From the IMG/VR virus record IMGVR_UViG_3300022935_000005, positions 62,001 to 126,000 of that record: DNA of 64,000 nt; one strand, written 5' to 3'. Position 1 is the stretch's first letter, and the number at the start of each line of letters is the position of its first letter. Below the pieces are notes generated by a model. It made no database searches, was not told the origin of the DNA, and saw nothing but the letters and a program-made list of their open reading frames with translations. The translations under genes and the position numbers were made by a program. Shown piece after piece: positions 21,031-61,740 of this stretch.

Positions 21031-21066
21031 TAGCTTACAGCTAGTTAGTTAAAAACTTCGGTTTTT

Positions 21067-21100
21067 CGGGTGGGAGCTTGTCTCCCACCCGTTTTTTTTT
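21067..21100 (+). terminator. Intrinsic terminator
   Basis: CGGGTGGGAG-CTTGT-CTCCCACCCG followed by T9. Confidence 0.92.
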
Positions 21101-21153
21101 GCTTTTTATACTGTTCTAAAAGATAGTTATAATTCAACGTGTAATCTATCTAG

Positions 21154-21684
21154 ATGGAGTTATGTATGGATTTTACAGATGTGATTGATGAAAAGTTGGC
21201 GACTTTAAGAGCTAGTCGGGAGACACTGGAAAAAAATGCTTCTGATTTTATGTTCCACGTACACCGAGTTAACGAGCAACTGTTAGGCGCTATAGAACAG
21301 ATTAATGACCTTGAAGACGATCCAGCGCTGATTAAAGCTGAGTTTGCGTCAGTGATGAAGCAGGTTGCTCCCGTCCTTGTGAGTTCTTGGAACACTGCTC
21401 ACGGTGATCTCGGCGCTCTTGATCAAGAAATAAAACGTTTCGAAGAAATGAGGTCTATGTATGTAGATTGGTCGTTACAAACAGCAGAGCCTGAACAAGA
21501 GAGCGACCTTCTTCCGCAATCTGATATCGTGCAATATGAACCTGATATCGTACAAGGTGTTCTTGACGGAACAATTCCTGAGCCAAGTAAAAACTCCGCG
21601 ATCCGGAGAAAGCCAGGAACACGTCCACCCCTAACCCTCAAGCAATATAGGCAAATACAGGGTGGTGAAGATTCTAGTGAGTAA
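21154..21684 (+). CDS. Hypothetical coiled-coil protein
   Basis: 176-aa ORF, helical N-terminus. ATAGTTA motif upstream at 21123; the start may be a downstream ATG after GGAG. Confidence 0.6.
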   Translation: MELCMDFTDVIDEKLATLRASRETLEKNASDFMFHVHRVNEQLLGAIEQINDLEDDPALIKAEFASVMKQVAPVLVSSWNTAHGDLGALDQEIKRFEEMRSMYVDWSLQTAEPEQESDLLPQSDIVQYEPDIVQGVLDGTIPEPSKNSAIRRKPGTRPPLTLKQYRQIQGGEDSSE

Positions 21685-21690
21685 TACTTA
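21684..21690 (+). promoter_or_regulatory. Putative late promoter ATACTTA
   Basis: Ends 5 nt before ATG 21696. Confidence 0.5.
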
Positions 21691-21695
21691 AGGGT

Positions 21696-22634
21696 ATGGC
21701 TGGAATACTAGACAAAAAGACAAGGTTTGTTGATACGTTCTTAACTGATCGTGGCAGGCAAGAGCTAGCGAAAGGTGAGCTTCGTTTTTCGTTTGCTACT
21801 TTCTCTGACTATGGCACGTTTTATGATACAGACATATCCAACCCCAGGGTTGCTAGCGAGGTAACTTCTAGAATTCAATTTGAAGCAGCAAACCGCCACC
21901 AAGACTTGGTGATACCTGAGTATGATGCGGACGGAGGAATGTTATATCCGACTGACGGATTTGACTTGGTCAATGGTCAATTATCTATATTAACTGGATC
22001 TGATACGCTTCTAAAGGGATCATCGCTAGTCGCTTCTGCGTCTGTTGCTATATCTGATTCGATGCAATCTTTTAGTGACATTCGCCCATTACGCTCTGAA
22101 GAAGCTATACAGAGAACAACTGGATTTGAGCTAAGTCTTGAATCTAACGTCTTTGAGGTAAATTCTACGTTTCCCTTGTCTCAAGCTGCACCAAAAGAAA
22201 TCTTGCTTGAGAACGCTGAAAGTCTGTGGCAGGATAAGAAACTGACTCATGTTAGAAACTTTCAATTCTTGCCACCTGTGAATAAAGTGTCTGGGAAGGT
22301 ACTTAAAGACTTTCCGAGACTACAGCAGCCAGCTCCGCTTTCTTATGAAGATCTTAGAATAGAGCTTGAAGGGCTTAGTAGCAATGAGTGGTCAGGTGTT
22401 GGTCCCCCTGCTGAAGTTGTTTTTGAAAACACAAGCCCTCAAAATAATTTAGTTTGCCAAGTATGGGAAATAACGAGTTCTAGCGTGGAAAAGCTTCGAA
22501 TGATAGATTTTGGTGAATTTGCCGATGCCGACCCATTCTCTCCTGGAAAACATGTTTTCTTCGTCGGCAAGCTGATGGATGATTCCACTGGCGATAAGAC
22601 TTTCTTAAACCTATTTACGGTGGTGTTTGATTAA
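21696..22634 (+). CDS. Virion structural protein (paralog of 30591..31298)
   Basis: N-terminus GILDKKTRFVDTFLTDRGRQELAKG...F.D is similar to GFLDNSTNNIIVDAVLTDYGRELLAR...FGDD. Confidence 0.6.
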   Translation: MAGILDKKTRFVDTFLTDRGRQELAKGELRFSFATFSDYGTFYDTDISNPRVASEVTSRIQFEAANRHQDLVIPEYDADGGMLYPTDGFDLVNGQLSILTGSDTLLKGSSLVASASVAISDSMQSFSDIRPLRSEEAIQRTTGFELSLESNVFEVNSTFPLSQAAPKEILLENAESLWQDKKLTHVRNFQFLPPVNKVSGKVLKDFPRLQQPAPLSYEDLRIELEGLSSNEWSGVGPPAEVVFENTSPQNNLVCQVWEITSSSVEKLRMIDFGEFADADPFSPGKHVFFVGKLMDDSTGDKTFLNLFTVVFD

Positions 22635-25171
22635 TGTTACTAAGAGCCCCAGTTCTAGAAGAGGATATTATCACTCTGCCTTCTCATCCTGCTGAGATCA
22701 GAAATATCATATTTCGTGAAGATTCTGATATCATTTTTTATCGTGTGACTGTAATGCTTGACGTAGACGCCGTCATACAGAATGATTCTTATAACCTTAA
22801 TGCATTTGTGTATAAGAAAAAGCCTGATGAGAATCTTGCTGAAAGAAAAGTTACTTCTCCACGCCGCTGGAAAAGAAAGACTAAAAGGTTAGAGAAAAAA
22901 GTTCGCCGCAATGCAAAAAAACGCCGTGAGCAAATCATAGCCAGAACCCGTGTTGATGTGTCAAAATACATCAGCAATGACCTCGCAAACGCAAAACTAG
23001 CAAGCTTGACCAGGCAACAGCTAAATAGCATTTCTGCTTTATCAACTGTGGTGAAACCACTAGATCCATTTACGCAAAACGTCAAGGCTTCTATCGTCAC
23101 ATCGACTCCTGGCATTAACCCATTTAAGAAGAAGGCTTCTAAGAGTGCTAAAAAAAGTAATTTAAGCACAACAGTGAATCAAACACCAAACGCTAAAGTA
23201 CCAAGCTCCCCCAAATTTTCAAAAAGCATTTTAAAGTCAAAAAAAGATCCTGCGTCTATAAATTCGTCGTCTTTAGTTTCTCTTAAGACTCTGTCTAAGC
23301 CGTTACAATCGCTAGCTTCAAGTTTTGTCTTTACACCACCAACAGCTCTTCAAGCTCTTCCTATTGTTCGTGTTTCTCCACGACAGAAAAAAGTAGATTT
23401 TGTTTTAAGGATCTCGAGAAATAGACTTGTAGATGCTTCATCATTCTTCTTGAAGCTTGAACTTGAGAATAAAAAAGGAATCAAAGTAGATGAAGCGTCA
23501 TGTGTTATTCCCCATGCAAGGATACTGAATACGTTTATTACTCCCAATGCTGCTCCTAAGCTTGAGGCCGAATATATCAAACCTGGCGCAATTTCTGTGA
23601 GAATCACCCCGCCCCGTGATAGGATGGCCAAAACCCTGAAAGTATTTCGACGACTTACTGCGCCTGTAGAGGGAGGTACTGATTCTGGATCTGCGTGGAG
23701 TATTGTTTATAATTCTTCTATAGAGGGTAGCGCTGAGGTAGCTTTTAAGGATGAGATAAGTACCTCCAGGCCAGTGCTCTATAGAGCTGTAGCATACGGA
23801 GAAAATTCTAAGCCTTCCGAGAAGTTCGCCTCTACAGTCGTTTTGCCTTTAAAACAGTTTGCAGTAAAGCAGACGGGAGCTTTGACAGCTGTTCCACGAA
23901 TGACGACCAGCGGCTCAAACACATTCGTCAAAGTCATGGTAAAAGATATACCAGATGACGTTGTTACAGTGATGTTGAGAAGGTACGATTTGACGACCGC
24001 ATCTGACGCTAAGAGAAAGGCATCAACCGGCTCCGGATTTGTATACGTCGGAAGTACACCAGATCTACAAACACTTGGTGTTGAACAGCTCGGTCCAAAT
24101 TCGTCTGTGTCTTTCACAGATTTGGCAACCAAAACAGGAAGAACCTACAGCTTCGTACCTGTAGGTGTAACCAAGGCAGGTCGTGAAATCGTGGGTTCTT
24201 CTGCAATTCTTGAGATCCCTATCTCTCCCTCAAGAGAAAAAGTCAGAATGTCTGTCACTGCTCCAAAGATAGTGTCCGCCGAACCGGCTTCTGCCGAGCT
24301 GTCATTCGAGCTGTCTGCCACATTCACTGAATTCGGCTTCTCTGAAGTCAGAAATACGCTGGAGTCAGGAGGTCAGAAATCGTTATTCGATAATAATTTG
24401 ATCCAAGATCGTGATAAGTTCGAGTCGTTAATAAGTTTCTTAGTCGAACGCCGAAATTCTAAGACAGGAGAGGAAGAGAGCTTTGGCGTAGTCCAAGCTG
24501 GTGAGTTTTTCGATAATCCTGAAAAAAGAGAAGAAAAAAATGTGAAGCCACCAGAGCCTGGAACAGAATACACGTACATTTTTACGGCTCTTATTGCCTC
24601 TGCCGAGTCTTTGTTTCCGACTCTGACAAGAAGTGATGTTGATATAAGGACGCTACAATCCTTTTCAAGGAAGGTTTCAAAGTTCCAGAACCCGCTATCG
24701 TTAAGTAGAGCTACACTACAGTCCACACAGCGGCAGCAGGACAAGACACGGCCTTCTCGTCTTGAACCGTCCGACCCAGTGGTCGCTGGTCGTACAGATG
24801 TCCAAGTGGTTCATGAAATAAGATTTCCGCTGTCTTCTAGAGACGACAATACACTTAGGATAGAAAACTACAAGAGCTTTAATCGTTTAGTCTGGAAAAC
24901 GTCTCAAGCAAACACGATCGACCATTTCAAGATATACGTTATCTCTTCCGGTGGTAGAGTATTAATAGATACTGTACATTGTGATGATTCAACTTCTGAG
25001 TTTTATTATAGACATTACAGCAAAGATTATGCCGTGAACTATAAATACGTAATACAACCAATAAACTTGGCCTATGAAGAGCTCTCTCCTATCTATAGTC
25101 GATCAATCAAAGCTTTTAGCGCCTTGAAGACCTTGTCATTGTCGAGCTTCACTAAGATTAAGAGGCTGTAA
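22634..25171 (+). CDS. Hypothetical structural protein with FN3/Ig-like beta domains
   Basis: 845 aa. FN3-like motifs (VFRR...F.D...LYRAVAY; F.D...GRTYSF; GTEYTYIF). Translationally coupled. Confidence 0.5.
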   Translation: MLLRAPVLEEDIITLPSHPAEIRNIIFREDSDIIFYRVTVMLDVDAVIQNDSYNLNAFVYKKKPDENLAERKVTSPRRWKRKTKRLEKKVRRNAKKRREQIIARTRVDVSKYISNDLANAKLASLTRQQLNSISALSTVVKPLDPFTQNVKASIVTSTPGINPFKKKASKSAKKSNLSTTVNQTPNAKVPSSPKFSKSILKSKKDPASINSSSLVSLKTLSKPLQSLASSFVFTPPTALQALPIVRVSPRQKKVDFVLRISRNRLVDASSFFLKLELENKKGIKVDEASCVIPHARILNTFITPNAAPKLEAEYIKPGAISVRITPPRDRMAKTLKVFRRLTAPVEGGTDSGSAWSIVYNSSIEGSAEVAFKDEISTSRPVLYRAVAYGENSKPSEKFASTVVLPLKQFAVKQTGALTAVPRMTTSGSNTFVKVMVKDIPDDVVTVMLRRYDLTTASDAKRKASTGSGFVYVGSTPDLQTLGVEQLGPNSSVSFTDLATKTGRTYSFVPVGVTKAGREIVGSSAILEIPISPSREKVRMSVTAPKIVSAEPASAELSFELSATFTEFGFSEVRNTLESGGQKSLFDNNLIQDRDKFESLISFLVERRNSKTGEEESFGVVQAGEFFDNPEKREEKNVKPPEPGTEYTYIFTALIASAESLFPTLTRSDVDIRTLQSFSRKVSKFQNPLSLSRATLQSTQRQQDKTRPSRLEPSDPVVAGRTDVQVVHEIRFPLSSRDDNTLRIENYKSFNRLVWKTSQANTIDHFKIYVISSGGRVLIDTVHCDDSTSEFYYRHYSKDYAVNYKYVIQPINLAYEELSPIYSRSIKAFSALKTLSLSSFTKIKRL

Positions 25172-28100
25172 TGTCTGATTTATTAAAAGATCTAAAAACT
25201 AAAGACAATCCTGCGAAAGGCTCTACTGCTCCTGTGACCTTAGAAGAGCTGTTGCTGAATGAAAATCAGGTCATTCAAGACGTAGCAGAAGTGTCGACAG
25301 AACAAGACCAAGAAGAGACTGTCGCTAAGTCACGCCGTGAACGCCGAAAGAAGCTTAAGACAAATCGGGTTGTTGATAGAGCAAAGTCCAGTCAAAGTTC
25401 TAGAGTACAAGATAGAGCTAACTTAAGAAGACAAGAGAAGAATGTCTCTAATCTTCTAGACAGACAGAAGGCTTCATCACCAAAGAAAGAGGTTCAAAAG
25501 CTAGAGTTCGTGGGTTCACCGAGAGGACAAATGAAGAAAGCTTTTAACACCACAAACAAAAGTGATGTTAAGATAGTACGACCCGTACTTCTTGGTGCTT
25601 TTGATTTTGAGCCTATCCGCGATGGCTCTGGATGGACTCCTGCTGGTAATCTTCTACGCCTTAAGAGGGCAGTCAGACAACTAAAGGTAGACAAACAGGT
25701 AAGCATCTCTATTAACGATACTAGTTTTTCTGAAGTCCCGTTAGTCGCCGCGCTAGAAGAATATTCCAAGTCAAGCGAGTTGTTTAGATCAAACTTAAAT
25801 CCGTCAAATATCTCTCTATATGAAGAAGCGCTAACTGCCTTTGGACTGACAGTAGAAGACGGTGCAAGCTATACCGAAATCTTGTACACACTGATGATAG
25901 AGTATAATAGGGCTTTAAAGGCAGGATCGGCTCGTCTAGATGAAAGTTCAGACCGTGCTATAGAGCAAGGAACATCGCTTGTTTCTTCTAAGGATGAAAA
26001 AATAGAATCGTATGTTGCCGCGCTTAAGGGTTCTGACAGTCAGTGTTATGATTTATTCGTGGATGCCGATGATGATGATATAGAAATATCTCTTAAGTGC
26101 ATGCTTTCTTTGTTATCGAAAGAGGCACTTCTTTCATATAACACTCTGAAATACAACAGTGACGATGCTACAACAAACAATATAGAAGTCACGAGCTTGT
26201 GGGCGAGAAATCTTCTAATGACAAAAGAAGATAAAAACGCTATCAAGAAACCTTCTCGTGTTACAGCGAACGGAAACTTTACACGAAAGACTGCACACGG
26301 AATATGCTTTTCTGGTAAAGACCCGGAAACGAATAGAAAGACGTACAATTATCCTTTTGAACCGTCTCAAATAATAACAGCAGATGGTACGAAAACACTC
26401 ACGAGTTTTGATTTCGCTGAAAGAGCCTCCAATACTTCTGGAGTGGTTTATTATGGTGTTAATGAGAACGGCGAAATAGCAGAATATGAAACCCCATATG
26501 AAGCCACGTCTGATGGCTTGAGCCGTGTGAGTTCACAAATCACTTCGCTGTTCGACACTTCCAGTATAGGAACCGGCGATTCTTATGCCGTTAGTTTCTT
26601 GACTGGTATCCTTGGTTGGATGAGTCTGTCTGCGGCCGTTGCTCCTAATTTTACGAAGTTCATGGTAGGTCTCCAAGCAATGGTTGAAGCAGCCGAAAGT
26701 AAAGACATACTTGATGAATTCATGATGTACTTGGCGTTTCGTCAGGAGAAAATTCAAGACTACGACGGTGTAGGTGATCCGTTACCGGGTCCAGCAACAG
26801 TGTTGCGTCGTTCAAAAAGGCTAAGAAAAAAGCTTGCAAGCGCCGGTTCCGGAAGGAAAAAAACTACATTAACGTCAAACCCAAGAAAAGTGTCTGTTTC
26901 CCCTCCACCTGGAGAGTCTTCCGGTACCAAGACGTTTGTATCACCAGAAAAAAGATCACAGATAACAACCCAAGACAGAGTTTCTAGCTCCGACTCCGGT
27001 ACCCTAGAGTCAATCTACGATCTGACGTTTGAGGAAGTAGCAGCTAGACTTGCTAAAAAACTTTCAAGAAGATTTTCCTATAACAGTGTAAGGTTTTCTG
27101 TTGATCCATCGAAGACGTTATCCATAGACGAAGATATTGTAAAGTCTGCTCTGACAGATTTGACGAATGCTATATTTGAGTCAATGATGAACTATAGCCA
27201 GATTGTAACGCAGGGTATGTCTAAGATAGATGACGAAGACCCGAAAGTCTTTGTGGAGTCTAAATCAATACTCAATAGGTACAACGAAAGCGCCTTTAGC
27301 GTCTTTTTCATCTCGATATGTTGTAAGCTTGCTAAGCTGATTGTTGGTCCTCGTGCCTCAATCACCACCGGGTCTTCGATGTATGCAAGAATCAAAGCTC
27401 CCGGGGTGAGTAAGTCCTCGACTTCTTCTGGTGAAAGAACTAAAGTGAAAGTATCATCTTCTTACTCTACCGACTTGAGAGAATTAAGCGAGTTTTTGAG
27501 CTCTGACGAGCGTGATACATCTGACATAATAGACACATATCCGACGTTGGCTTCGATTATATCATCGCTAGCCGAAGAAGAAGAGTTTTTGCGTACGTTT
27601 GCATCATCTTTAGCTACATTCTTTTCAAATGTAAATAATAGTTTTGGTTCATTGAGAGATGCTCTTAGCGCAGAGATAGACGGAAAGAAGTTATCAGAAT
27701 ATCTCGGTTCAGTGACTCCTTCTTCTGACCTCACCAAGCTTATGAAAACGTATCCCTATTTTCTGAACGCTAGTGACATGATGTATAATAACGTCAAAGT
27801 GAAAAATAAGACCACAAGTAAAGATGGTTTTCGCTCTTTATTATCTATAGAGCAAAAGAAACAAAGAGTCTTATGTATTGGTATACCTGCGGGTCTGATA
27901 GAAAAGACCAGATACGAGCCAGCTGAAATAGAAGATGTTTCATCATCTGCTGCTCAAAATGTAGATGACAGTGTCTTCTCTATTCTGATAGAGAAAGTCG
28001 ACCTGACAGATCCTGATATTAAATACAAGGATAAGGAGTTTGAGTTTTCAAGAAACTTATTCTGTATAGGAGCTGATCCTTACCTGGCGTTCCTGAATGT

Positions 28101-28734: not shown

Positions 28735-28735
28735 T

Positions 28736-30538: not shown

Positions 30539-30560
30539 TTTATGTTGTTTTCCGGGCGAT

Positions 30561-30567
30561 ATATTTA
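30561..30567 (+). promoter_or_regulatory. Putative late promoter ATATTTA
   Basis: Intergenic, upstream of the SD of 30591. Confidence 0.55.
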
Positions 30568-30590
30568 ACAATGGTTCAGGAGGAAATTAG

Positions 30591-49192: not shown

Positions 49193-51106
49193 ATGTCTAA
49201 GAAATTCACTTTAGAGACGCTTACCGAAGGAATTCGCCAGCGTCATCAGGGCGAGGCAAATGCTCGTCTTACTGAGAAGTGGTCTCGGACGGGTCTTCTG
49301 CGTGGTCTAGACGGCGTCCATCGTGAAAACATGGCAACGCTACTCGAGAACCAAGCAGGACAGGTCCTTCGTGAGTCCTCAACACTTGGCGGCGGTGGTC
49401 TCAACCCTGCTGCTGGCAGCGGAGACATCCGCGGCTTTACCAACATCGCTTTCCCAATCGTCCGTCGTGTATTCGGTGGTTTGGTTGCTAACGAGTTGGT
49501 TTCAATCCAGCCAATGAGCCTTCCTTCTGGTCTGCTCTTCTACCTTGACTACACTTACGGCACAAACGTCGGTGGTGAGGGTGACGGCATTGGTAGTTCG
49601 ACAAAGAACACCTACAGTAACAACCAGTCGATTTACAACAACCCGGCTGGTAAGGGTATCCGTTCTGGATCACTCGGCGTAGGTGGTCAGTACGACCTTG
49701 CTGGTAGCGGCTACAGCCGCGTTCACACCGGCTCGAACGTTACTACCCTCGCTGACGGGGTCACTACAAGCGTTTTCTGTCTTGGTGGTAGTGCTTCTCA
49801 AACCCGTGCTGTTATTACAGGCGGTGGTCTTGCCTCTTCCGGTTCTGACGGTCGCTTCCTGCAGTTTGATCCCCAGATCAGCCAGTTGATTGATGAAGAG
49901 AGCGGCGAGTTCTTCTTCATGACCGTCGACTTGGGCGCGCTTGGTGCTGACTTCGATGTAACAGCAGTCAAGGAAGCAGCGCTTGTTCTTTCTGGTACAA
50001 CTGGTCTTACTGCCGCTCTTAATGACATGCAGCCAATTCCGGAGACAGTCCAGGGTGGTGCTGGTGTCTACAACATTCGTCGTCTGAACCAGCTTGTTAG
50101 TTCAAGCTCATTCAAGGGCGAGATCTCACCTGCACCGATGGCATCAGCTCAACAAGCTGGCGCTGCTCTATTGCTGGTCTGTTCAGGCTCTGTCATGAAT
50201 GACACCGCTTCATTCATGTTAACGTACCCGAAGACAGCGACTCTCAACGCTGATGACGGTTCAACTCTCGTTGTTCCAACATTCGAGTCTGATTTCGGTT
50301 CCGGTACTCCTGGTTCACCTGTTCCAGAGATTCCCGAGATCGATATCAAGATCGAGAGTGTTTCGGTTGTTGCTCAGACTCGTAAGCTCCGCGCCCGCTG
50401 GTCACCAGAGCTCGCTCAGGACTTGAACGCTTACCACAGCCTTGACGCTGAGGTTGAGCTTACTCAGATCCTCTCCGAGCAGATTGCCCTTGAGATTGAC
50501 CGTGAGATCCTCAACGATCTTCTCATGCAGGCTGATACCAACTACTACTGGGACCGTCGTCCTGGTCGTTTCGTCAACAAGAAGACTGGTGCCGATCAGA
50601 CAAGCGCTGGCTCGCTCACTTCACCTGCCTTCACTGGTACGGTCCGTGAGTGGTACGAGACTCTTGTTGAGACCATCATCGACGTTGCTAACGAGATTCA
50701 CCGTAAGACCCTTCGTGGCTCGGCGAACTTCATCGTTGTTAGCCCTGATGTTGCCACGGTTCTTGAGGCAAGCGTTCTTTACCGTCCAAGCCTTAGCATT
50801 GACGGTGACGGACAGGTCGGTGCCATGTCACTTGGCGCTGAAGCAGTTGGTAGCTTGAGCAACCGTTTCACGGTCTACAAGGACCCCTACTTCCCACGCA
50901 ACAAGATTCTTGTTGGTTACAAGGGTGGTAGCTACCTTGAGACTGGTTACGTATACGCTCCTTACGTACCTCTCATCGTTACTCCGACGATCTTCGCACC
51001 TGAGGACTTCACCCCGCGTAAGGGTGTCATGACTCGCTACGGTAAGAAGATGGTCCGTAACGACTTCTACGGTACCGTTACCTGCCTCGGCATGGACGTT
51101 ATCTAA
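49193..51106 (+). CDS. gp23: Major capsid protein (T4 gp23-like)
   Basis: KWSRTGLL, PIVRRVF, VSIQPMSLPSGLLFYL, TRKLRARWSPELAQDLNAYH, EIDREI, YAPYVPL and GVMTRYG. Strong codon bias. Confidence 0.96.
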   Translation: MSKKFTLETLTEGIRQRHQGEANARLTEKWSRTGLLRGLDGVHRENMATLLENQAGQVLRESSTLGGGGLNPAAGSGDIRGFTNIAFPIVRRVFGGLVANELVSIQPMSLPSGLLFYLDYTYGTNVGGEGDGIGSSTKNTYSNNQSIYNNPAGKGIRSGSLGVGGQYDLAGSGYSRVHTGSNVTTLADGVTTSVFCLGGSASQTRAVITGGGLASSGSDGRFLQFDPQISQLIDEESGEFFFMTVDLGALGADFDVTAVKEAALVLSGTTGLTAALNDMQPIPETVQGGAGVYNIRRLNQLVSSSSFKGEISPAPMASAQQAGAALLLVCSGSVMNDTASFMLTYPKTATLNADDGSTLVVPTFESDFGSGTPGSPVPEIPEIDIKIESVSVVAQTRKLRARWSPELAQDLNAYHSLDAEVELTQILSEQIALEIDREILNDLLMQADTNYYWDRRPGRFVNKKTGADQTSAGSLTSPAFTGTVREWYETLVETIIDVANEIHRKTLRGSANFIVVSPDVATVLEASVLYRPSLSIDGDGQVGAMSLGAEAVGSLSNRFTVYKDPYFPRNKILVGYKGGSYLETGYVYAPYVPLIVTPTIFAPEDFTPRKGVMTRYGKKMVRNDFYGTVTCLGMDVI

Positions 51107-51132
51107 GTCCTTTAATCTTCGGATTAACTTTA

Positions 51133-51160
51133 GCGGGGTCCCTTCGGGGGCCCCGTTTTT
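51133..51160 (+). terminator. Intrinsic terminator after major capsid gene
   Basis: GCGGGGTCCC-TTCG-GGGGCCCCGT followed by a T tract. Confidence 0.92.
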
Positions 51161-51221
51161 GTTTTAACCTATTTTTGATTCGATTATTATTGATAAAATT
51201 TGCTTTGCAAAGGAGAAACTT

Positions 51222-51606: not shown

Positions 51607-51621
51607 AAAAGAGGTGGTGTT

Positions 51622-52788: not shown

Positions 52789-52797
52789 CGAGGAGCC

Positions 52798-53460: not shown

Positions 53461-53462
53461 AG

Positions 53463-54773
53463 ATGACTACTCGATACACAAATAATAAGAAAGGCTTTTC
53501 AGAGAAAGTCAATTCTGGGTATACAAATGATGTCGCTGATGATTTTTCTATGCCGTCATGTACCATAGAGGATGTCGATAGAGCTGTCTTTGAGCTGTTT
53601 GATAAAGAGCTACCCTTTTATTTCTCTAGAAAAGATGCGAAGAAAAAAATCCCTGTTATCTTTGCCACCGGTGAACGCTTCGCACTACTTGCAAGAAACA
53701 AACCACTTAGGGACAAGAGTGACGCCTTAATTTTACCGCTGATATCAGTTGTCAGAACCGGTATAGACCAAGATAGCGCCAAGGGCACTGGATTATTCCA
53801 GGGCGCACCTGTTCTTGTAAAAGTACAGCTCTCTGATGAGGACCCAATATACCAAAGATTGCAAAATAAGAATGGGTTCAAGAATGCTAGTGATATTGCT
53901 ATATCGGCTGATGACAACACTCCCGCTGGTTTGGGGGGCGGAACTACGCCCGACCAGCTTGCAACCAGGAGAGTTGCTCCTGCAATATCAGTATCAGCAA
54001 GAAACGGTACTATTCTAAGCAACAGCGTTAACAAGAATATTTTTGAATTTATAGAGATTCCGCCGATAAAACAGTACACTGCAAATTATGAAGTTACATT
54101 TTGGGCGCAGTATACACAAGAGATGAATTCTATGTTGACAGTCATGATGAACGGATACATAGAGAATCGCCGTCGCACTTACGTCGTGACGACAAAAGAA
54201 GGTTATCAATTCACGGCTTACGTTGACGCGGCACTAAGTCCACAAAACAACTTCGATGATTTTACCGATTCAGAGCGCCTTGTGAAGTATAGTTTCGCGA
54301 TGTCCGTAAGCGCTTACTTAGTAGCGGCTCAAGAGCCAGGGATGCCTGTTCCTTTTCGCAAAACGGTATCTGCACCAGAAATATCGTTTGATACTTCTAC
54401 TGCTGCGAGAGGCGGTCCTCAAACAGCCCCAGTGGCAGCAGTTGCTTCTGGAGACCCTAAAAGTTATGTGCTTGATGATATCGCGACCGAAGAAGATGGG
54501 TATCCAGCAGCCGCGATGGGAGCCGACCCTACGAAGTTGATATCAGGTTTTCCCGGTAATCCCGCTGCTTCAATTGGTGGCAAGCAATCTGATTTAGGTA
54601 ATTCAGGTCCAACCGCCATATTTACAGATATAGACCCCTTTACAGGTAAAAGGGAGAAAAGGATTATATTGATGTCCGCATCTACTCCTAATAAGGGAGA
54701 GACTGTTTTTAGGTTCGGACTTAAAGCACCCGAGGGTATTGCTATTGACTTGGGAAAATTACTTAAAGATTGA
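53463..54773 (+). CDS. Tail terminator/sheath stabiliser (T4 gp15-like)
   Basis: IPVIFATGER, LPLISVVRT and YEVTFWAQYTQEMN; lies between neck and sheath genes. Confidence 0.65.
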   Translation: MTTRYTNNKKGFSEKVNSGYTNDVADDFSMPSCTIEDVDRAVFELFDKELPFYFSRKDAKKKIPVIFATGERFALLARNKPLRDKSDALILPLISVVRTGIDQDSAKGTGLFQGAPVLVKVQLSDEDPIYQRLQNKNGFKNASDIAISADDNTPAGLGGGTTPDQLATRRVAPAISVSARNGTILSNSVNKNIFEFIEIPPIKQYTANYEVTFWAQYTQEMNSMLTVMMNGYIENRRRTYVVTTKEGYQFTAYVDAALSPQNNFDDFTDSERLVKYSFAMSVSAYLVAAQEPGMPVPFRKTVSAPEISFDTSTAARGGPQTAPVAAVASGDPKSYVLDDIATEEDGYPAAAMGADPTKLISGFPGNPAASIGGKQSDLGNSGPTAIFTDIDPFTGKREKRIILMSASTPNKGETVFRFGLKAPEGIAIDLGKLLKD

Positions 54774-54783
54774 TTTCGTAATA

Positions 54784-54814
54784 AAAGACATTTCGCTATC
54801 TCACAGAATAGTTA
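54784..54814 (+). promoter_or_regulatory. Extended promoter AAAGACATTTC-N11-GAATAGTTA (sheath 1)
   Basis: Same bipartite layout and spacing as 51576-51606. Confidence 0.6.
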
Positions 54815-54848
54815 TTTGTGATAGCTTAAGATCCAGGAGACCTGACTA

Positions 54849-57800: not shown

Positions 57801-58037
57801 CCTAACACTCCTGCGACCAGAGCTCGTTTCGTTAATTCTGTTACACCGCTCCTGGCTACCATACAGTCTCAGCAGGGTATTGAGTCTTTTAGAGTCGTGA
57901 TGGATGATACCAACAATACTCAGGAAGACGTTGAGAACAACAGACTGAACGGTCGCATTGTTGTGGTGCCAACAAGGGCTATCGAATTTATTGCTATAGA
58001 TTTTGTCATTACAAACAGTGGCGTAGACTTCCAGTAG
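54849..58037 (+). CDS. gp18: Tail sheath protein 1 (gp18-like)
   Basis: FRSPGFFEREID, GTAEKGPAFVP, PWFAPAGFNRG, LYDARINPI, FGQKT, ALDRVNVRRM, FEPN and EFIAIDF. Confidence 0.93.
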   Translation: MAEQTFRSPGFFEREIDASQRQTEIVGVPAGVVGTAEKGPAFVPVTVGSTADFVNKFGTVDPERFGPYAVDAFLSNRTALTYVRVLGAGANETAADITNTQNTGTVLNAGFKIEPIISDSPMSASDSSVQFIVARHDVSASADYSFPQFTDNPSFDPGNTGDKVDLVRAVVLTASGSRLQVLDIGETWGNELDQNADLKNDSSHAANLCFALAISSSAGAAFTNEYLDQAGAGVKIVTASLNPTHQSYITNVLNTDPLKFAEEKHLLYLDFAVEDELASVDVNAAPAVSVLSGSNNVVTTALTGNAAKALNAFGRFDTRFRTPKSPAIISQPYGKKEHDLFHFETLSDGEWGNDKVKITIANIKASTNDNYPYPSFEVQVRRFDDSDLDQQVLEAFPGCVLDPDSDNFIGKKVGDYKARYNFDATNAAEKRIIVTGRYPNVSNFVRVVLNDAVYNKTLPRDACPFGFRGVPVIKTSDAMTDRLHTGLELDGITYGQAGASLQRLWGADKLTTRYALTGSIVPPLPLRYKVTRGDAKDGWFSGFPGEKELVDKRLNWGVKYERCPETGSIANANQNVNASSVLNPLVRAYSKFQGLAEIGTILTGSGADAFNANKFTLARVVLAGTGSTASTLLDNLTGSAPEHMLEAAYIRNGVPDSKDYTIMDPDLSDYGRITLATLIQSSSVKFNRFTPYTAFNIPVFGGFDGVNILDKDMRYMNDRAASTDDTSSVDGQIGKAASGFSAGTIGLRSNPGGTGRKNNSIASYREAATIITDPMSTRINILAIPGIRDSYVTDWAAERTKDYSMAIYLMDIPAWSEAQARLFLTEDREAIASASIAWPDVRETAEQFESRVFDNNYSATYFPDVYITDKTTGSRVRVPASVAAIGALAYNDSVAYPWFAPAGFNRGGLDQVKNTDIRLTAGDRDTLYDARINPIANFADGSFVIFGQKTCQLAQSALDRVNVRRMMLELKRQVVSVADKILFEPNTPATRARFVNSVTPLLATIQSQQGIESFRVVMDDTNNTQEDVENNRLNGRIVVVPTRAIEFIAIDFVITNSGVDFQ

Positions 58038-58038
58038 T

Positions 58039-58045
58039 ATAGTTA
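58039..58045 (+). promoter_or_regulatory. Putative late promoter ATAGTTA (sheath 2)
   Basis: Lies in a 34-nt intergenic gap. Confidence 0.55.
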
Positions 58046-58071
58046 AGAAATGAAACAGGAGATTATCAGAA

Positions 58072-61000
58072 ATGGCTGAACTTACCTTTAAAAGTCCGGG
58101 AGTGTCCACTAGAGAGATTGATCTTTCTGGCCCAACCCAAACGGGACCGAGTGGAATTCCTGCTGGTGTAATCGGAACCGCCAAGCAAGGTAGAGCATTT
58201 GTTCCGATCACTGTCGCAACATTTGCCGACTTCATCGCGGAGTTCGGAGATGTAGAGACAACGCTCTTCGCTCCGATGGCAATGAGACAGTGGTTAAGTT
58301 ATGCAAATGCTGGAACTTTCGTTCGAACCCTTGGTGCTGGTGACGGAAAGAAGAGAACCGCAACCGGCGCAGTAACAAACGCTGGGTTCGTTGTTGGGTC
58401 GCAAACTATCCAAACAAACGGTGCTATCGGAAAGAACGGTTATGCTGGATCGACTACAATAAACCCCGGAGCTCTTGGTAGGGCGCACTTCCTGGGTGTC
58501 ATTATGTCTCAATCAAATGGCTCCGATGTGTTCACAGATGCTGGACTTCAAGCTGTACAACCGATTCTCAGAGGTGTTCTCCTGGCACCCTCTGGTGTCA
58601 ACCTTGCGTTGAGCTCTTCAAGATACGAGACCACCAATAACCTTCCGCTGGGTGCACCCACTGCGAACAACTACGCTGCAAATTTCGCGTTCGGCACCGG
58701 CGCGGCCCAAGATGCTGGTTCAACGCTTGGTGCTGTTAACATCGGAGGTGGTCGCCAAGAGTTCGTGATTTTACAGAATGGTCACACTCACACTGACAGC
58801 TATCCAACTGTCATTACAGCGTCTTTTGATGTTGATGCTCCAAATTACTTTGGTAACATTCTAAACACTGATCCTACGAAGACAGAGCTAGCAGGTCACT
58901 GTCTGTATGCTCAATTCAACGTTCCTCCCGCGTTTGCGGTATGCTCAGGCTCATTGCGGATGGTCTCGACCTACAGTGCGTCTTTCGACGGTGTTAAAGA
59001 GGGTGTCACAATAAAGAACGAAGAGATTGCATTCCTCCTGACCGGTTCAGCAGGCAGAAACACAGGGACTACAACGAAGCCGAACTTTGAAGCCTTTACA
59101 GACAGGTTCCGGACTGCAAAGTTCCCGACTATAATTTCACAGGAATTCGGTGGTCAAAACAAAGACTTATTTACCGTTCACTGTCTTGATGATGGAGCGA
59201 TTGGTAACCACCGAGTTAAGATCTCTGTTGAGAACATTGTCAAGTCAACGAACGTAAACAATAAGTACGGCACGTTCGATCTGCTCGTTAGAGATTTCTA
59301 CGATACCGATGCTGAGCCGAAAGTTTTGGAGCGGTTTGTTAAGTTAAGCCTTGATCCTAATAACGAACGGTACATTGCTAGAGTGATTGGTGACTACAAT
59401 ATCTTCTACGATTTTGACAAGCGTGCTGGTGGCCAGAAGCTTGTTGTAGAAGGAAGTTATCCGAATGCTTCGAATTACGTCAGAGTATCTCCGTCAGTAG
59501 ACATGGAGCGTGGCACACTTCCTGCAACTGCTTTACCGGTAGGTTTCCGAGGAGTACCTCACTTGGTGACGTCTGGATCATCTATATTCGCAGATCCAAC
59601 TGCTTATGATGTCACAAGCGTTCTTGATGATGCTGAAGTCGCCGCGCAGCTGGTCCAGCCCCCGGTTCCGATGAGAAGAACTGTCGCTCAAGGTCTTGCG
59701 CCAAGAAAGAGAGTTAACTCATCCCTATACTGGGGTATCCAGCACGAGAAGCTGCAGAGTGTGGCACAGCCCAACTCTTCGACCACACTGGACGCCTCAA
59801 TCGATTCATACGGATTGTACTTCCCGACTTGGGACGTTGTGAACCAAGCAGCAATGGTTGGAGCTAATCCTGGCGTTGCTGATAATGATGGAACAATCTA
59901 CGATTGTGATAGATTCAATAACAACAAGTTCTCACTTGAGAAAATTCAGGTCATCACCAATTCTAGTGACGAAGCCGATGCTCAACAGTGGGCCGCTGCT
60001 ACCTACAGAAGGAAGGGTCTCGCTGAGGCGACAATGAATGACATTGATGGTAGTTCGTCGTCATCTACACGACTGCTTAGCGTAGAGAAAGACTTTGGTC
60101 TCTCGACTGCTCGTCCGTTCCTTAAGTTCACCATGATCGCTCAAGGTGGCTTCGACGGTCTAGACGTCTTCAATGAAGAAAGGGTCAAGATGACCTCTCC
60201 AGCCGTCAGAAGAGAAATGACATATGAGAACCAAGGTCTCATTGCTGGACCTACTGTGGCGGCTTACAGGAAGGCTCTAGATGTTATGGCTGAGAGATCA
60301 GACGTAGACATCCAGTTGTTGGCGATTCCAGGCATTCGTCACAGCGGAGTTACTGATTACGCGATCACAACCGTCGAGAATAGATTTGATGCAATGTACA
60401 TCATGGATATCGAGGTTGAAGACGTTCTTGGTAATATCGTCTCCGGGTCCGATCAAGATGTCAGTGTTACAAACACTGCAGCAACTTTCGCGGCAAGAAA
60501 TCTAGATTCAAGCTTCGCGGCTGCATACTTCCCCGATGTTGTAATGACAGATCAAACATCAGGTGCTGCTTCTTCTGCTCCACCAAGTGTAGCGGTTCTT
60601 GGGGCTTTCGGTCTAAATGACCAAGTTGCCTTCCCATGGTACGCCCCCGCCGGCTTCACCCGCGGCGCTCTGAAGAACGTAGTAGAGACACAGGTCAAGT
60701 TGAACAGAACAAATCTTGATACTCTCTACGAAGTAGACATCAACCCGATTACGTCGTTCCCACAATCACCAGAGGTTGTCGTGTTCGGACAAAAGACTCT
60801 TCTAGCCGCCCAAAGTGCTCTAGACAGAGTTAACGTACGACGACTCTTGATTGATATCCGTCGGCAAGTTAGAAAGATTGGCGATACATTCTTGTTCGAG
60901 CCAAACAGGGAGTCCACGCTGGCAAGGTTCTCAGCAGCGGTTACTCCGGTCTTAACTAGAATTCAACAGCAACAAGGCCTTGAGCGGTTCAAGGTTCAGA

Positions 61001-61134
61001 TCGATACCACAACGACTACTCAAGCTGATATCGAAAACAACACTGTAAGAGGTAAGATCTTCTTGCAGCCAGTACGTTCTGTCGAGTTTATCTCACTCGA
61101 CTTTGTTGTAACGAACGCTGGTTTGGACATATAA
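58072..61134 (+). CDS. gp18: Tail sheath protein 2 (gp18-like paralog)
   Basis: FKSPGVSTREID, PWYAPAGFTRG, INPI, FGQKT, ALDRVNVRRL, FEPN and EFISLDF. Confidence 0.93.
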   Translation: MAELTFKSPGVSTREIDLSGPTQTGPSGIPAGVIGTAKQGRAFVPITVATFADFIAEFGDVETTLFAPMAMRQWLSYANAGTFVRTLGAGDGKKRTATGAVTNAGFVVGSQTIQTNGAIGKNGYAGSTTINPGALGRAHFLGVIMSQSNGSDVFTDAGLQAVQPILRGVLLAPSGVNLALSSSRYETTNNLPLGAPTANNYAANFAFGTGAAQDAGSTLGAVNIGGGRQEFVILQNGHTHTDSYPTVITASFDVDAPNYFGNILNTDPTKTELAGHCLYAQFNVPPAFAVCSGSLRMVSTYSASFDGVKEGVTIKNEEIAFLLTGSAGRNTGTTTKPNFEAFTDRFRTAKFPTIISQEFGGQNKDLFTVHCLDDGAIGNHRVKISVENIVKSTNVNNKYGTFDLLVRDFYDTDAEPKVLERFVKLSLDPNNERYIARVIGDYNIFYDFDKRAGGQKLVVEGSYPNASNYVRVSPSVDMERGTLPATALPVGFRGVPHLVTSGSSIFADPTAYDVTSVLDDAEVAAQLVQPPVPMRRTVAQGLAPRKRVNSSLYWGIQHEKLQSVAQPNSSTTLDASIDSYGLYFPTWDVVNQAAMVGANPGVADNDGTIYDCDRFNNNKFSLEKIQVITNSSDEADAQQWAAATYRRKGLAEATMNDIDGSSSSSTRLLSVEKDFGLSTARPFLKFTMIAQGGFDGLDVFNEERVKMTSPAVRREMTYENQGLIAGPTVAAYRKALDVMAERSDVDIQLLAIPGIRHSGVTDYAITTVENRFDAMYIMDIEVEDVLGNIVSGSDQDVSVTNTAATFAARNLDSSFAAAYFPDVVMTDQTSGAASSAPPSVAVLGAFGLNDQVAFPWYAPAGFTRGALKNVVETQVKLNRTNLDTLYEVDINPITSFPQSPEVVVFGQKTLLAAQSALDRVNVRRLLIDIRRQVRKIGDTFLFEPNRESTLARFSAAVTPVLTRIQQQQGLERFKVQIDTTTTTQADIENNTVRGKIFLQPVRSVEFISLDFVVTNAGLDI

Positions 61135-61146
61135 TCTGAGAACGAT

Positions 61147-61153
61147 ATAGTTA
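61147..61153 (+). promoter_or_regulatory. Putative late promoter ATAGTTA (tail tube)
   Basis: Lies in a 41-nt intergenic gap. Confidence 0.55.
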
Positions 61154-61175
61154 GTAATAACAAGGAGTAACAAAG

Positions 61176-61664
61176 ATGCCAGAGACACTATCAGTTACCG
61201 ACATGCTGCCGAACAAGTTTGAGCCGAAAAGAAAGTTTCGGTGGGTGTTCGCTATTGAGGGTATTGACGCATTTCTTATTAAGACGGCTGCCCGTCCTAC
61301 CATGAACACTGCCGAGATCGAAATTCCATATATGAACGGTCAAAGGTATATCGCTGGTAAGACGAAGTTTGACGCAGTTTCAGTGACCCTTCACGATCCA
61401 ATCGCTCCGTCAGGTGCGCAACAAGTTATGGAATGGGTCCGTACTCATTACGAATCTGTTTCTGGACGTGGTGGTTACGCGGATTTCTACAAGAGAGATT
61501 GTCAGCTTAAGCTTCTTGACCCTGTCGGGACAGTCGTAGAGCTTTGGGACATGAAGGGTTGTTTCCTAACGTCTGCCGGTTTTGGTGACTTGGATTACGG
61601 CTCAGAAGATCCTGCAGAAATCGCTCTTACGATCCGTTTCGATAACTGCGTCCTTCAGTACTAA
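61176..61664 (+). CDS. gp19: Tail tube protein (gp19-like)
   Basis: FEPKRKFRW, AARP, YIAGK, VMEW, YKRD...LLDP.G.VVE.W...G.F and LDY; follows the sheath genes. Confidence 0.9.
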   Translation: MPETLSVTDMLPNKFEPKRKFRWVFAIEGIDAFLIKTAARPTMNTAEIEIPYMNGQRYIAGKTKFDAVSVTLHDPIAPSGAQQVMEWVRTHYESVSGRGGYADFYKRDCQLKLLDPVGTVVELWDMKGCFLTSAGFGDLDYGSEDPAEIALTIRFDNCVLQY

Positions 61665-61706
61665 TAAACATCTAGTCTCAGATTGTTTGCTAAGCTTCGG
61701 CTTACG

Positions 61707-61740
61707 AAAAGCCCTCCTTTACGGTGGGCTTTTTTGTTTT
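61707..61740 (+). terminator. Intrinsic terminator after tail tube gene
   Basis: AAAAGCCC-TCC-TTTAC-GG-T-GGGCTTTTTT. Confidence 0.8.

What the first reader, a model, noticed from the sequence alone, without database searches (positions are those of the whole stretch)
21051..61740. AU-rich cUUCGg hairpin placed directly before each of three intrinsic terminators
AAAAAC-TTCG-GTTTTT (21051-66), TTAATC-TTCG-GATTAA (51112-27) and TAAGC-TTCG-GCTTA (61691-704) each lie 0-5 nt upstream of a separate GC-rich terminator. They follow the three genes expected to be most highly expressed. Stem sequences differ but pairing and loop are kept, indicating selection on structure. Established knowledge: cUUCGg loops are extra-stable and common in T4 intergenic RNA. 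The consistent tandem layout suggests a dedicated 3' stabilising, protein-binding or termination-tuning element.
Basis: partly seen in the sequence, partly recalled or inferred. Interest (0 to 1): 0.6.

Follow-up and report, generated by a model that had tools for sequence, protein, structure and literature searches.

The report
UUCG mini-hairpins before phage late terminators
In a 281-kb T4-like phage, each of the three terminators that close the late structural operons is preceded by a tiny AU-rich hairpin capped by the very stable UUCG loop; the pattern is real and not chance, but it is a lineage-specific variant of the known two-hairpin terminator layout and its function is untested.

Summary
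Three perfect c(UUCG)g hairpins with 5-6 bp AU-rich stems sit 0-5 nt before three canonical intrinsic terminators. These follow a 468-aa ORF of unknown function, the major capsid gene and the tail-tube gene. They are the only sense-strand, non-coding hairpins of this kind in the whole 280,913-bp genome, and they mark all three canonical terminators of the structural-gene block. Chance is excluded.

The hairpins are weak (-1.6 to -3.5 kcal/mol) and coexist with the terminators rather than competing with them. Relatives keep orthologous terminators, but the closest ones (73-96% protein identity) lack the hairpin. More distant relatives carry analogous pre-terminator hairpins with GNRA, UUCG or other loops, one clade with covariation. 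Spacer hairpins are about twice as frequent as in shuffled sequence.

T4's own CUUCGG hairpins are single and GC-rich, so this is not the T4 pattern.

Best reading: a fast-folding structured spacer that forms part of a composite 3'-end module. It most likely makes termination robust and leaves little single-stranded AU-rich RNA. A real exonuclease block or a protein-binding site is unlikely. This is a modest new variant of known tandem-hairpin terminators.

The parts
19624..21030 (+). 468-aa ORF of unknown function; last gene of the operon that holds the 2209-aa and 2417-aa giant ORFs
   Evidence: ORF list. No PHROG, Pfam or Atlas assignment.
21031..21043 (+). Extra small hairpin TAGCT[TAC]AGCTA directly after the stop codon (site 1)
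   Evidence: Present in the MFE and centroid fold of 21028-21100 and in the hairpin list.
21051..21066 (+). Pre-terminator hairpin 1: AAAAAC[TTCG]GTTTTT, 6 bp of which 5 are A-U
   Evidence: -1.6 kcal/mol alone. Stem pair probability 0.89-0.94 at 37 C in context.
21067..21100 (+). Intrinsic terminator 1: 10-bp GC-rich stem (21067-21091) plus T9
   Evidence: Terminator scan. -19.2 kcal/mol.
21105..21133 (+). Sigma-70-like promoter candidate for the next operon (TTTATA-17-TATAAT)
   Evidence: Promoter scan, 10 of 12 matches. Consensus match only.
49193..51106 (+). Major capsid protein gene (T4 gp23-like), 637 aa
   Evidence: phrog_138, E 3e-73. tblastn hits to capsid genes of myoviruses.
51112..51127 (+). 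Pre-terminator hairpin 2: TTAATC[TTCG]GATTAA, starting 5 nt after the capsid stop codon
   Evidence: -2.5 kcal/mol alone. In the short stop-to-tail context a competing AGUCC/GGAUU pairing is the MFE. Stem probability 0.63-0.87 at 37 C and at least 0.91 at 20 C.
51132..51166 (+). Intrinsic terminator 2: 11-bp stem with its own c(UUCG)g loop, followed by T5GT4
   Evidence: -21.2 kcal/mol. An identical terminator is present in relative L017 at 73% capsid identity, without hairpin 2.
58072..61134 (+). Tail sheath gene, same operon as the tube gene
   Evidence: phrog_23, E 5e-57.
61176..61664 (+). Tail tube gene, 162 aa
   Evidence: phrog_4542, E 4e-30.
61665..61689 (+). Extra imperfect hairpin filling the spacer directly after the tube stop codon (site 3)
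   Evidence: MFE fold of 61662-61745.
61691..61704 (+). Pre-terminator hairpin 3: TAAGC[TTCG]GCTTA, 5 bp
   Evidence: -3.5 kcal/mol alone. Stem probability 0.82-0.89 at 37 C in context.
61706..61740 (+). Intrinsic terminator 3: GC core 61711-61729, A-tract/U-tract extension 61706-61734, then T6GT4
   Evidence: (-14.7 kcal/mol). Orthologous terminators with compensatory stem changes occur in tube-gene relatives.
61758..61786 (+). Promoter-like TTTACA-N17-TAAGAT ahead of the baseplate-hub gene
   Evidence: Pattern search. The same two boxes recur downstream of the tube terminator in many relatives.

Best explanation
The three hairpins are cis-acting RNA structures. Together with the canonical terminator that follows each one, they form a composite 3'-end module for the phage's late structural operons.

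Shown:
- Each hairpin is a self-contained 14-16 nt fold capped by the fast-folding c(UUCG)g tetraloop.
- Each lies on the mRNA strand in the spacer between stop codon and terminator, and abuts the terminator stem by 0-5 nt.
- Each coexists with the terminator rather than competing with it.
- Together with further small hairpins at sites 1 and 3, they leave little of the 3'UTR single-stranded: 1-nt linkers at site 3, but a 7-nt linker remains at site 1, and site 2 keeps 5 nt before and 4-5 nt after its hairpin.

Inferred:
- A spacer of roughly 15-45 nt is needed so that terminating ribosomes do not reach the terminator stem.
- In this lineage, selection has folded that AU-rich spacer on itself.
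- The hairpin snaps shut as soon as it leaves RNA polymerase. The spacer therefore cannot mispair with the terminator arms or the U-tract, and may stack on the terminator stem. This would make termination after the most heavily transcribed late genes efficient and independent of context.
- A secondary benefit is the removal of single-stranded AU-rich RNA, the preferred entry site for RNase E-type endonucleases, just upstream of the protective 3' hairpin.
For: - Position and uniqueness: these are all three sense-strand, non-coding c(UUCG)g hairpins of the 281-kb genome. They sit at all three canonical terminators of the 64-kb structural block. Strong terminators after the SSB gene, the Hsp20 gene and small genes lack them.
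- Coupling to the terminator: the gap to the terminator is tight (0, 4-5 and 1-6 nt). The distance to the stop codon varies (20, 5 and 26 nt).
- Compatibility: hairpin and terminator appear together in the MFE and centroid at sites 1 and 3. All three show high pair probability in 150-nt context.
- General tendency in the phage group: spacers carry hairpins of 5 bp or more about twice as often as dinucleotide shuffles. Capsid relatives: 29 observed vs 14.5 expected, 0 of 500 shuffles (p<0.002). Tube relatives: 20 vs 13.1, p=0.008. Two related 255-kb genomes: 6 vs 2.3 and 3 vs 1.0.
- Another example in this genome: the ATPase gene (G000 4949-6034) has a GC-rich pre-terminator hairpin. A gene of matching size and position in G001 (362 aa, presumed ortholog, homology not tested) has one with a different sequence.
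- Covariation: a distant capsid clade has a covarying hairpin between stop codon and terminator. 85.5% of cells are paired versus 17-44% in slid controls, and 4 pairs show double changes. It is capped by GAAA, GTAA or UUCG.
- Same design elsewhere: L045 has a c(UUCG)g hairpin plus terminator.
- Module behaviour: in L027 the hairpin and terminator are duplicated together after two consecutive genes.
- Experimental precedent: short UUCG/GAAA/GAGA hairpins placed upstream of terminators were the best insulators of termination efficiency from upstream context for T7 RNAP in vitro. The authors describe this as similar to reports for E. coli RNAP (PMC8783025).
- Tandem hairpins downstream of mycobacterial gyrA are reported to terminate better than single ones, and two-hairpin units are reported to be common in bacteria (PMC8355165).
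Against: - No RNA data could be obtained, so neither 3' ends nor read-through are known.
- Equilibrium folding shows that the terminators form with probability 0.89-0.99 whether the hairpin is native, disrupted or removed. Any effect must therefore be kinetic or steric, which these tools cannot test.
- The nearest relatives terminate the same genes with orthologous terminators and no such hairpin. The element is dispensable in principle.
- In the cited synthetic study, 6-bp hairpins insulated worse than 3-bp ones.
- The hairpins are weak, and hairpin 2 has a competing fold in short context.
Confidence: 0.4

Rival explanations
1. The hairpins are primarily mRNA-decay determinants. They protect the very abundant late structural mRNAs in one of two ways: as a second 3' roadblock behind the terminator hairpin, or by hiding the AU-rich spacer from endonucleases that would otherwise cut off the terminator hairpin. 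They have no effect on termination itself.
For: - They are restricted to the late structural operons, whose mRNAs need to be abundant and long-lived.
- At site 3 nearly the whole 3'UTR from stop codon to U-tract is base-paired; sites 1 and 2 keep 4-7-nt single-stranded stretches.
- The stems are made of exactly the AU-rich sequence that would otherwise be single-stranded.
- Established knowledge, not tested here: RNase E prefers single-stranded AU-rich RNA, and cleavage just upstream of a terminator hairpin (E. coli rpsO) triggers decay.
- CUUCGG hairpins have been linked to T4 mRNA stability, at the 5' end of gene 32 (PMC8948821).
Against: - At -1.6 to -3.5 kcal/mol the hairpins are far too weak to stop 3' exonucleases that have already passed a terminator of -15 to -21 kcal/mol.
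- A weak helix that breathes gives only partial shielding from endonucleases.
- This model predicts no need for the tight adjacency to the terminator.
- The closest relatives do without the hairpin.
Confidence: 0.27
2. There is no selected function. The hairpins are by-products of rapid turnover of an unconstrained AT-rich spacer, or of a lineage-specific mutational process that creates short palindromes. They are tolerated because they do no harm.
For: - The spacer is the least conserved part of the 3'UTR. It does not align between relatives, whereas the terminators do.
- The hairpins are absent from the nearest relatives.
- Small hairpins occur in many shuffled spacers too: about 25% carry a hairpin of 5 bp or more.
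- Equilibrium modelling shows no dependence of the terminator on them.
Against: - Three independent perfect c(UUCG)g hairpins with different stems, all on the sense strand and all abutting terminators, is far beyond chance. The shuffle expectation is 0.00.
- No other such non-coding hairpin exists in 281 kb.
- Different stems exclude copying of one element.
- No known mutational process generates specifically C-UUCG-G-capped palindromes.
Confidence: 0.13
3. The small hairpin, the terminator hairpin and the poly-U tail together form a binding module for a host or phage RNA-binding protein (Hfq- or ProQ-like). This could stabilise the mRNA 3' end, or could yield abundant 3'UTR-derived small RNAs.
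For: [quoted passage not shown] 2012, as cited in PMC4509938).
- All three sites have two hairpins and a U-rich stretch just 5' of the first (UUAGUU, CCUUU, UUGUUUG).
- Site 1 has nine consecutive T.
Against: - Sites 2 and 3 have only 5-6 consecutive U, below the 7 or more typical of Hfq-dependent sRNAs.
- The cUUCGg loop is described as binding no protein and making no RNA contacts.
- The host, and therefore its chaperones, is unknown.
- There is no Rfam match.
- There is no evidence of a processing site or an internal promoter.
Confidence: 0.08
4. The hairpin and the terminator are alternative structures of an attenuator-like switch that tunes read-through into the next operon.
For: While only the 5' arm of the terminator has been transcribed, the predicted probability of hairpins 1 and 3 drops transiently. 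At site 3, GGCUU of the hairpin can pair with AAGCC of the terminator's 5' arm.
Against: - In the complete transcript both helices form together.
- The two elements share no extended complementarity at sites 1 and 2.
- Terminator probability is unaffected by disrupting or removing the hairpin.
- No ligand- or protein-sensing domain is present, and there is no Rfam hit.
Confidence: 0.03

Closest known systems
Intercistronic C(UUCG)G hairpins of phage T4 (Tuerk et al. 1988, PNAS 85:1364, cited via PMC8948821 and PMC4371310)
   Same: Both have a UUCG tetraloop closed by C-G, lie in non-coding RNA between genes of a T4-like myovirus, and sit on the sense strand. The suggested roles are folding nucleation and mRNA stability.
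   Different: In T4 the 31 cUUCGg hairpins have GC-rich stems, for example AAGGGGC/GCCCCTT. They stand alone or are themselves the terminator, as after gene 23. None is an AU-rich mini-hairpin abutting a separate terminator.
Tandem or 'cluster' hairpin intrinsic terminators of bacteria (Gupta and Pal 2021, PMC8355165; 'U-shaped' tandem terminators of Unniraman et al. 2002, the latter recalled from memory)
   Same: Two or more adjacent hairpins lie within about 50 nt downstream of a stop codon and are treated as one termination unit. Tandem hairpins are reported to terminate better than single ones.
   Different: Here the second hairpin is already a complete canonical terminator and the first is very weak. 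The first hairpin has a fixed hyperstable tetraloop, and the design recurs only at the three late-operon ends of one genome.
Synthetic insulating hairpins upstream of terminators (Tarnowski and Gorochowski 2022, PMC8783025)
   Same: Short stems capped with UUCG or GNRA loops, placed directly upstream of a terminator, buffer termination efficiency against upstream sequence context.
   Different: Those hairpins were engineered and tested with T7 RNAP in vitro. The best insulators had 3-bp stems, while 6-bp stems increased context sensitivity. The natural hairpins here have 5-6 bp AU-rich stems and are untested.
[quoted passage not shown] 2012, via PMC4509938)
   Same: A double hairpin is preceded by a U-rich stretch and ends in a terminator poly-U.
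   Different: The long run of 7 or more U is met only at site 1. These are mRNA 3'UTRs of a phage with an unknown host, and no binding has been tested.
3' 'positive retroregulator' stem-loops such as the Bacillus thuringiensis cry terminator (Wong and Chang 1986; recalled from memory, not checked here)
   Same: 3'-terminal structure downstream of a very highly expressed gene that raises mRNA level.
   Different: In that case the stabiliser is the strong terminator stem-loop itself, not a separate weak hairpin in front of it.

Membership tests
Canonical intrinsic (Rho-independent) terminator (applies to the downstream hairpins) | GC-rich stem-loop immediately followed by a U-tract, downstream of and co-oriented with a gene | tested here: met
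   Stems of -19.2, -21.2 and -14.7 kcal/mol, followed by T9, T5GT4 and T6GT4. The terminators are orthologous and carry compensatory changes in relatives.
Canonical intrinsic terminator (applies to the upstream mini-hairpins) | The hairpin itself is GC-rich and followed by a free U-tract | tested here: not met
   The stems have 1-2 G-C pairs. At site 1 the U-run is the 3' arm of the stem itself. Sites 2 and 3 are followed by CTTTA and CGAAAA.
c(UUCG)g extra-stable tetraloop hairpin | Four-base loop UUCG closed by a C-G pair on the transcribed (sense) strand | tested here: met
   All three sites meet this. All genes of the window lie on the + strand.
T4-type intercistronic CUUCGG hairpin | GC-rich stem of about 6-10 bp, standing alone or acting as the terminator itself | tested here: not met
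   The T4 genome scan found 31 hairpins, typically GC-rich, with none in tandem before a separate terminator. The stems here are AU-rich and 5-6 bp long.
Tandem / cluster-hairpin termination unit | Two or more adjacent hairpins within about 50 nt downstream of the stop codon | tested here: met
   There are two to three helices between the stop codon and the U-tract at each site. The definition is taken from PMC8355165.
Tandem / cluster-hairpin termination unit | The hairpins jointly raise termination efficiency | not testable with these tools
   This needs in vitro transcription or Term-seq.
Attenuator / riboswitch-type terminator switch | Mutually exclusive pairing between the upstream element and the terminator | tested here: not met
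   Both helices are present in the MFE and centroid. There is no Rfam family at gathering threshold.
Hfq-binding module of sRNAs | [quoted passage not shown] | tested here: inconclusive
   The double hairpin and the preceding U-rich stretch are present at all three sites. A run of 7 or more U occurs only at site 1, which has T9. Binding is not testable here.
Conserved structured RNA element (Rfam-type family) | Homologous occurrence with covariation across relatives at the same locus | tested here: not met
   The nearest relatives with alignable terminators lack the hairpins. Covariation is seen only for a different, longer hairpin in a distant capsid clade.

The most novel reading that the evidence does not exclude
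The hairpin-terminator-polyU units are not just transcript ends. After processing they would be released as very abundant small 3'UTR RNAs from the capsid, tube and fibre-like operons. Alternatively they would act in cis as high-copy binding sites. Either way they would titrate a host RNA chaperone or ribonuclease (Hfq-, ProQ- or RNase E-like) late in infection. That would make them a phage-encoded RNA sponge built into the most expressed messages.
Probability: 0.06. Interest if true: 0.7.

Novelty: new variant of a known kind. Interest (0 to 1): 0.3.

Why it matters
If the mini-hairpins do improve termination or 3'-end survival, they would be a natural counterpart of the 'insulator hairpins' that synthetic biologists place in front of terminators. 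They would also show that phages tune the ends of their highest-output operons with a minimal, portable 14-16 nt part.

The case also shows that such parts are gained and lost quickly. Orthologous terminators in close relatives lack them, while distant relatives evolved analogous ones with other stable loops. That is useful when annotating phage 3'UTRs and when designing compact terminators.

It does not open a new class of mechanism. The gain is a clean, testable natural example.

Tried and rejected
No 3'-end or expression data were obtained.
- Near-identical phage records: megablast against the phage collection found nothing.
- Rfam: no family at gathering threshold anywhere in the window.
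- T4-pattern hypothesis: rejected after scanning the whole T4 genome.
- Attenuator or alternative-pairing model: rejected by the folds.
- Equilibrium 'insulation' test: in silico, I disrupted or removed each hairpin and recomputed terminator pair probability. There was no consistent effect. An apparent drop at site 3 came from my terminator coordinates being off by one, and it disappeared with correct coordinates.
- Decayed-terminator idea: I considered that the AU-rich UUCG hairpins are T4-type terminators that lost their GC core. I rejected this because it needs symmetric loss in both arms three separate times.
- DNA-level palindrome or mobile mini-element: rejected. The stems differ, all loops are sense-oriented, and the only other copy of one hairpin sequence is antisense inside an ORF.
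- Identity of the 468-aa protein: PHROGs, Pfam and the Atlas feature search gave nothing usable. The claim that it is highly expressed stays open.
- A genome-wide promoter motif after the terminators: TTTACA-N17-TAAGAT occurs only once in the genome.
- Resources not used: the large protein searches, structure prediction and complex prediction, because the question concerns RNA.


Full report
WHAT THE WINDOW IS. The window is bases 62,001-126,000 of a 280,913-bp IMG/VR virus record with an estimated completeness of 92% and 45% G+C. All large ORFs lie on the + strand. The block encodes a T4 gp23-like major capsid protein, tail sheath, tail tube, a head-tail adaptor and a baseplate hub. The nearest named capsids belong to Microcystis, Flavobacterium and cyanophage myoviruses at below 60% identity. 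No near-identical phage record exists in the phage collection.

THE OBSERVATION.
- Site 1: AAAAAC[TTCG]GTTTTT at 21051-21066, followed after 0 nt by a 10-bp GC stem and T9.
- Site 2: TTAATC[TTCG]GATTAA at 51112-51127, followed after 4-5 nt by an 11-bp stem and T5GT4. That stem carries its own UUCG loop.
- Site 3: TAAGC[TTCG]GCTTA at 61691-61704, followed after 1 nt by an A-tract-extended terminator, whose GC core starts after 6 nt.
The three downstream elements are the strongest terminator candidates in the window. Their energies are -19.2, -21.2 and -14.7 kcal/mol.

IS IT CHANCE? No.
- The hexamer CTTCGG is not enriched: 27 found versus 27.0 expected in the window, and no excess in the genome relative to the reversed control.
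- The whole genome, both strands, contains only four perfect c(UUCG)g hairpins with stems of 5 bp or more. Three are these. The fourth (G000 161735-161748, the same 14-mer as site 3) lies antisense inside a 964-aa ORF, so the mRNA there reads a CGAA loop.
- Dinucleotide shuffles of the stop-to-terminator spacers give an expectation of 0.00 spacers with a UNCG/GNRA-capped hairpin of 5 bp or more.
- In 1.28 Mb of related phage DNA there are 143 UNCG-capped hairpins. Only four lie within 12 nt of a terminator, and three of those four are copies of this phage's own sites.

WHERE THE HAIRPINS ARE AND ARE NOT. A gene-centred scan of the genome, read together with the terminator lists, gives about a dozen convincing terminators.
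- The three in the structural block all have the UUCG mini-hairpin.
- Terminators after the gp32-like SSB gene, an Hsp20 gene and several small ORFs have none.
- The terminator after an ATPase gene (G000 4949-6034) is preceded by a GC-rich GGGAG[TTTG]CTCCC hairpin. A gene of matching size and position in the related genome G001 (362 aa; I presume it is the ortholog but did not test homology) has GGGGA[ATGACG]TCCCC at the same place.
- The three terminators divide the late region into long operons ending with the 468-aa ORF, the capsid gene and the sheath-tube pair.
It is unverifiable for the 468-aa protein, which matches no family.

PHYSICAL PROPERTIES.
- On their own the hairpins are weak: -1.6, -2.5 and -3.5 kcal/mol at 37 C.
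- In the full 3'UTRs, hairpins 1 and 3 appear in the MFE and centroid together with the terminator. Further small helices directly after the stop codon (21031-21043 and 61665-61689) reduce the single-stranded remainder. At site 3 the three helices are separated by single nucleotides. At site 1 a 7-nt linker (21044-21050) remains, and site 2 keeps 5 nt before and 4-5 nt after its hairpin.
- Hairpin 2 competes with an alternative AGUCC/GGAUU pairing in short context. With 150 nt of upstream sequence its stem probability is 0.87 at 37 C and 0.98 at 20 C.
- The hairpin and terminator are therefore compatible, not alternative, structures.
- Disrupting or deleting each hairpin in silico leaves the equilibrium probability of the terminator stem at 0.89-0.99. 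A low value for site 3 was caused by an off-by-one terminator coordinate and was corrected. Any influence on termination would have to be kinetic or steric.

RELATIVES: CAPSID GENE. I fetched 80 capsid-gene relatives at 62-100% identity and read the sequence after each stop codon.
- Copies of the same phage from other samples are identical.
- The next relatives have strong, alignable terminators. L017, at 73% capsid identity, has the very same terminator sequence. Their spacers do not align and contain no UUCG hairpin.
- Across the unique capsid spacers, the mean folding z-score versus shuffles is -1.0 over 57 spacers including this phage's own. 29 of 56 relatives' spacers carry a hairpin of 5 bp or more, against 14.5 expected.

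RELATIVES: TUBE GENE. I fetched 80 tail-tube relatives at 78-100% identity and treated them the same way.
- Relatives at 94-96% identity keep an orthologous terminator with a conserved TTTAC loop and compensatory stem changes, but they lack hairpin 3.
- For the tube spacers the tendency towards structure is weaker: 20 hairpins versus 13.1 expected, and median z = 0.

RELATIVES: OTHER FINDINGS.
- The 468-aa gene has only identical copies in the viral collection.
- Two related 255-kb genomes show the same excess at their own terminators: 6 versus 2.3 and 3 versus 1.0.
- These counts are not phylogenetically independent and should be read as a tendency only.
- A distant capsid clade (L020, L027, L041, L052, L060, L062 and others) has a longer hairpin beginning at the stop codon. 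It is capped by GAAA, GTAA or UUCG, and its pairing is supported by covariation. 85.5% of cells are paired versus 17-44% when the partner is slid. Four pairs show changes on both sides, and 1 of 500 shuffles reached the covariation score.
- L045 has a c(UUCG)g hairpin before a UUCG-looped terminator.
- L027 carries the hairpin-plus-terminator unit twice, after two consecutive genes.
- Overall, a small stable hairpin in front of the terminator is a recurrent, repeatedly gained feature in this phage group. The AU-rich UUCG version at three sites is peculiar to this lineage.

COMPARISON WITH T4. I loaded the whole T4 genome and listed every cUUCGg hairpin.
- There are 31, typically with GC-rich stems.
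- Several are followed directly by a T-run and so are the terminator itself, for example after gene 23.
- None is an AU-rich mini-hairpin placed before a separate terminator.

LITERATURE.
- The cUUCGg hairpin is described as an autonomous, fast-folding nucleation element that binds no protein and makes no RNA contacts (PMC4371310).
- CUUCGG hairpins are common in phage intergenic regions and have varied proposed roles (PMC8948821).
- Short UUCG/GAAA/GAGA hairpins engineered upstream of terminators insulated termination efficiency from sequence context with T7 RNAP. There, 3-bp stems worked better than 6-bp stems (PMC8783025).
- Two-hairpin 'cluster' termination units are reported as common in bacteria, and a mycobacterial tandem pair is reported to terminate better than either hairpin alone (PMC8355165).

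INTERPRETATION. The hairpins are RNA-level, cis-acting parts of a composite 3'-end module.
- I favour a structured-spacer role. The hairpin folds the obligatory AU-rich spacer on itself immediately after transcription. This keeps the spacer from interfering with terminator folding and may let it stack on the terminator stem. It also reduces the single-stranded AU-rich RNA upstream of the protective 3' hairpin. Confidence is 0.4.
- A pure decay-protection role is the main rival (0.27). As an exonuclease block it is energetically implausible, and only endonuclease shielding remains credible.
- Neutral origin (0.13) fits the lack of conservation but not the triple coincidence.
- A protein-binding or sRNA-type module (0.08) and an attenuator (0.03) have little support.
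- None of these can be settled without RNA 3'-end data or transcription assays.

VERDICT. This is a neat, lineage-specific variant of known tandem-hairpin terminators and of known uses of the UUCG tetraloop. It is of modest interest (0.3), with a small chance of something more unusual: an RNA sponge or 3'UTR-derived small RNAs.

Noticed in passing
window 61758-61786: A sigma-70-like promoter, TTTACA-N17-TAAGAT, follows the tube terminator ahead of the baseplate-hub gene. The same two boxes (GTTTACA ... TTTAAGAT) recur at this position in many tail-tube relatives. The motif occurs only once in this genome.
   Followed up: partly
L027:3983-4045 and L027:4913-4975: In a capsid relative, the whole unit is present twice about 930 nt apart, after two consecutive genes whose last codons are also similar. 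The unit is a hairpin with a GAAA loop plus a GC-rich terminator. This looks like duplication of a 3'-end cassette.
   Followed up: no
G000 4949-6088 (outside the window) and G001 8701-9840: An ATPase gene (phrog_1297) is followed by a GC-rich pre-terminator hairpin plus a strong terminator. A 362-aa gene at the matching place in G001 (presumed ortholog, homology not tested) has the same layout, but the hairpin sequences differ: GGGAG[TTTG]CTCCC versus GGGGA[ATGACG]TCCCC.
   Followed up: partly
window 3678-17585: Two adjacent giant ORFs of 2209 and 2417 aa, followed by ORFs of 538 and 468 aa. None has a PHROG match, and the 538- and 468-aa ORFs also lack a Pfam match. They are presumably fibre or other virion proteins.
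   Followed up: no
L083 (contig IMGVR_UViG_3300019282_000347): This 7-kb contig of the same phage ends 7 nt after hairpin 3, at the start of the terminator's 5' arm. This could be an assembly break at the hairpins, or a transcript end if the sample is a metatranscriptome. The sample type could not be checked.
   Followed up: no
G000 161735-161748 (outside the window): A second exact copy of the 14-mer of hairpin 3 lies antisense inside a 964-aa ORF. It is not followed by a terminator and is most likely a coincidence.
   Followed up: yes
window 51133-51156 versus L017:4975-5000: The capsid-gene terminator, including its own UUCG loop, is identical in a relative whose capsid protein is only 73% identical. 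The spacer in front of it shares no similarity. The terminator therefore evolves far more slowly than the spacer.
   Followed up: partly
G000 27728-27752 and 150375-150408 (outside the window): Two A-tract/stem/T-tract palindromic terminators score as terminators on both strands, so they look bidirectional. Neither has a pre-terminator hairpin.
   Followed up: no
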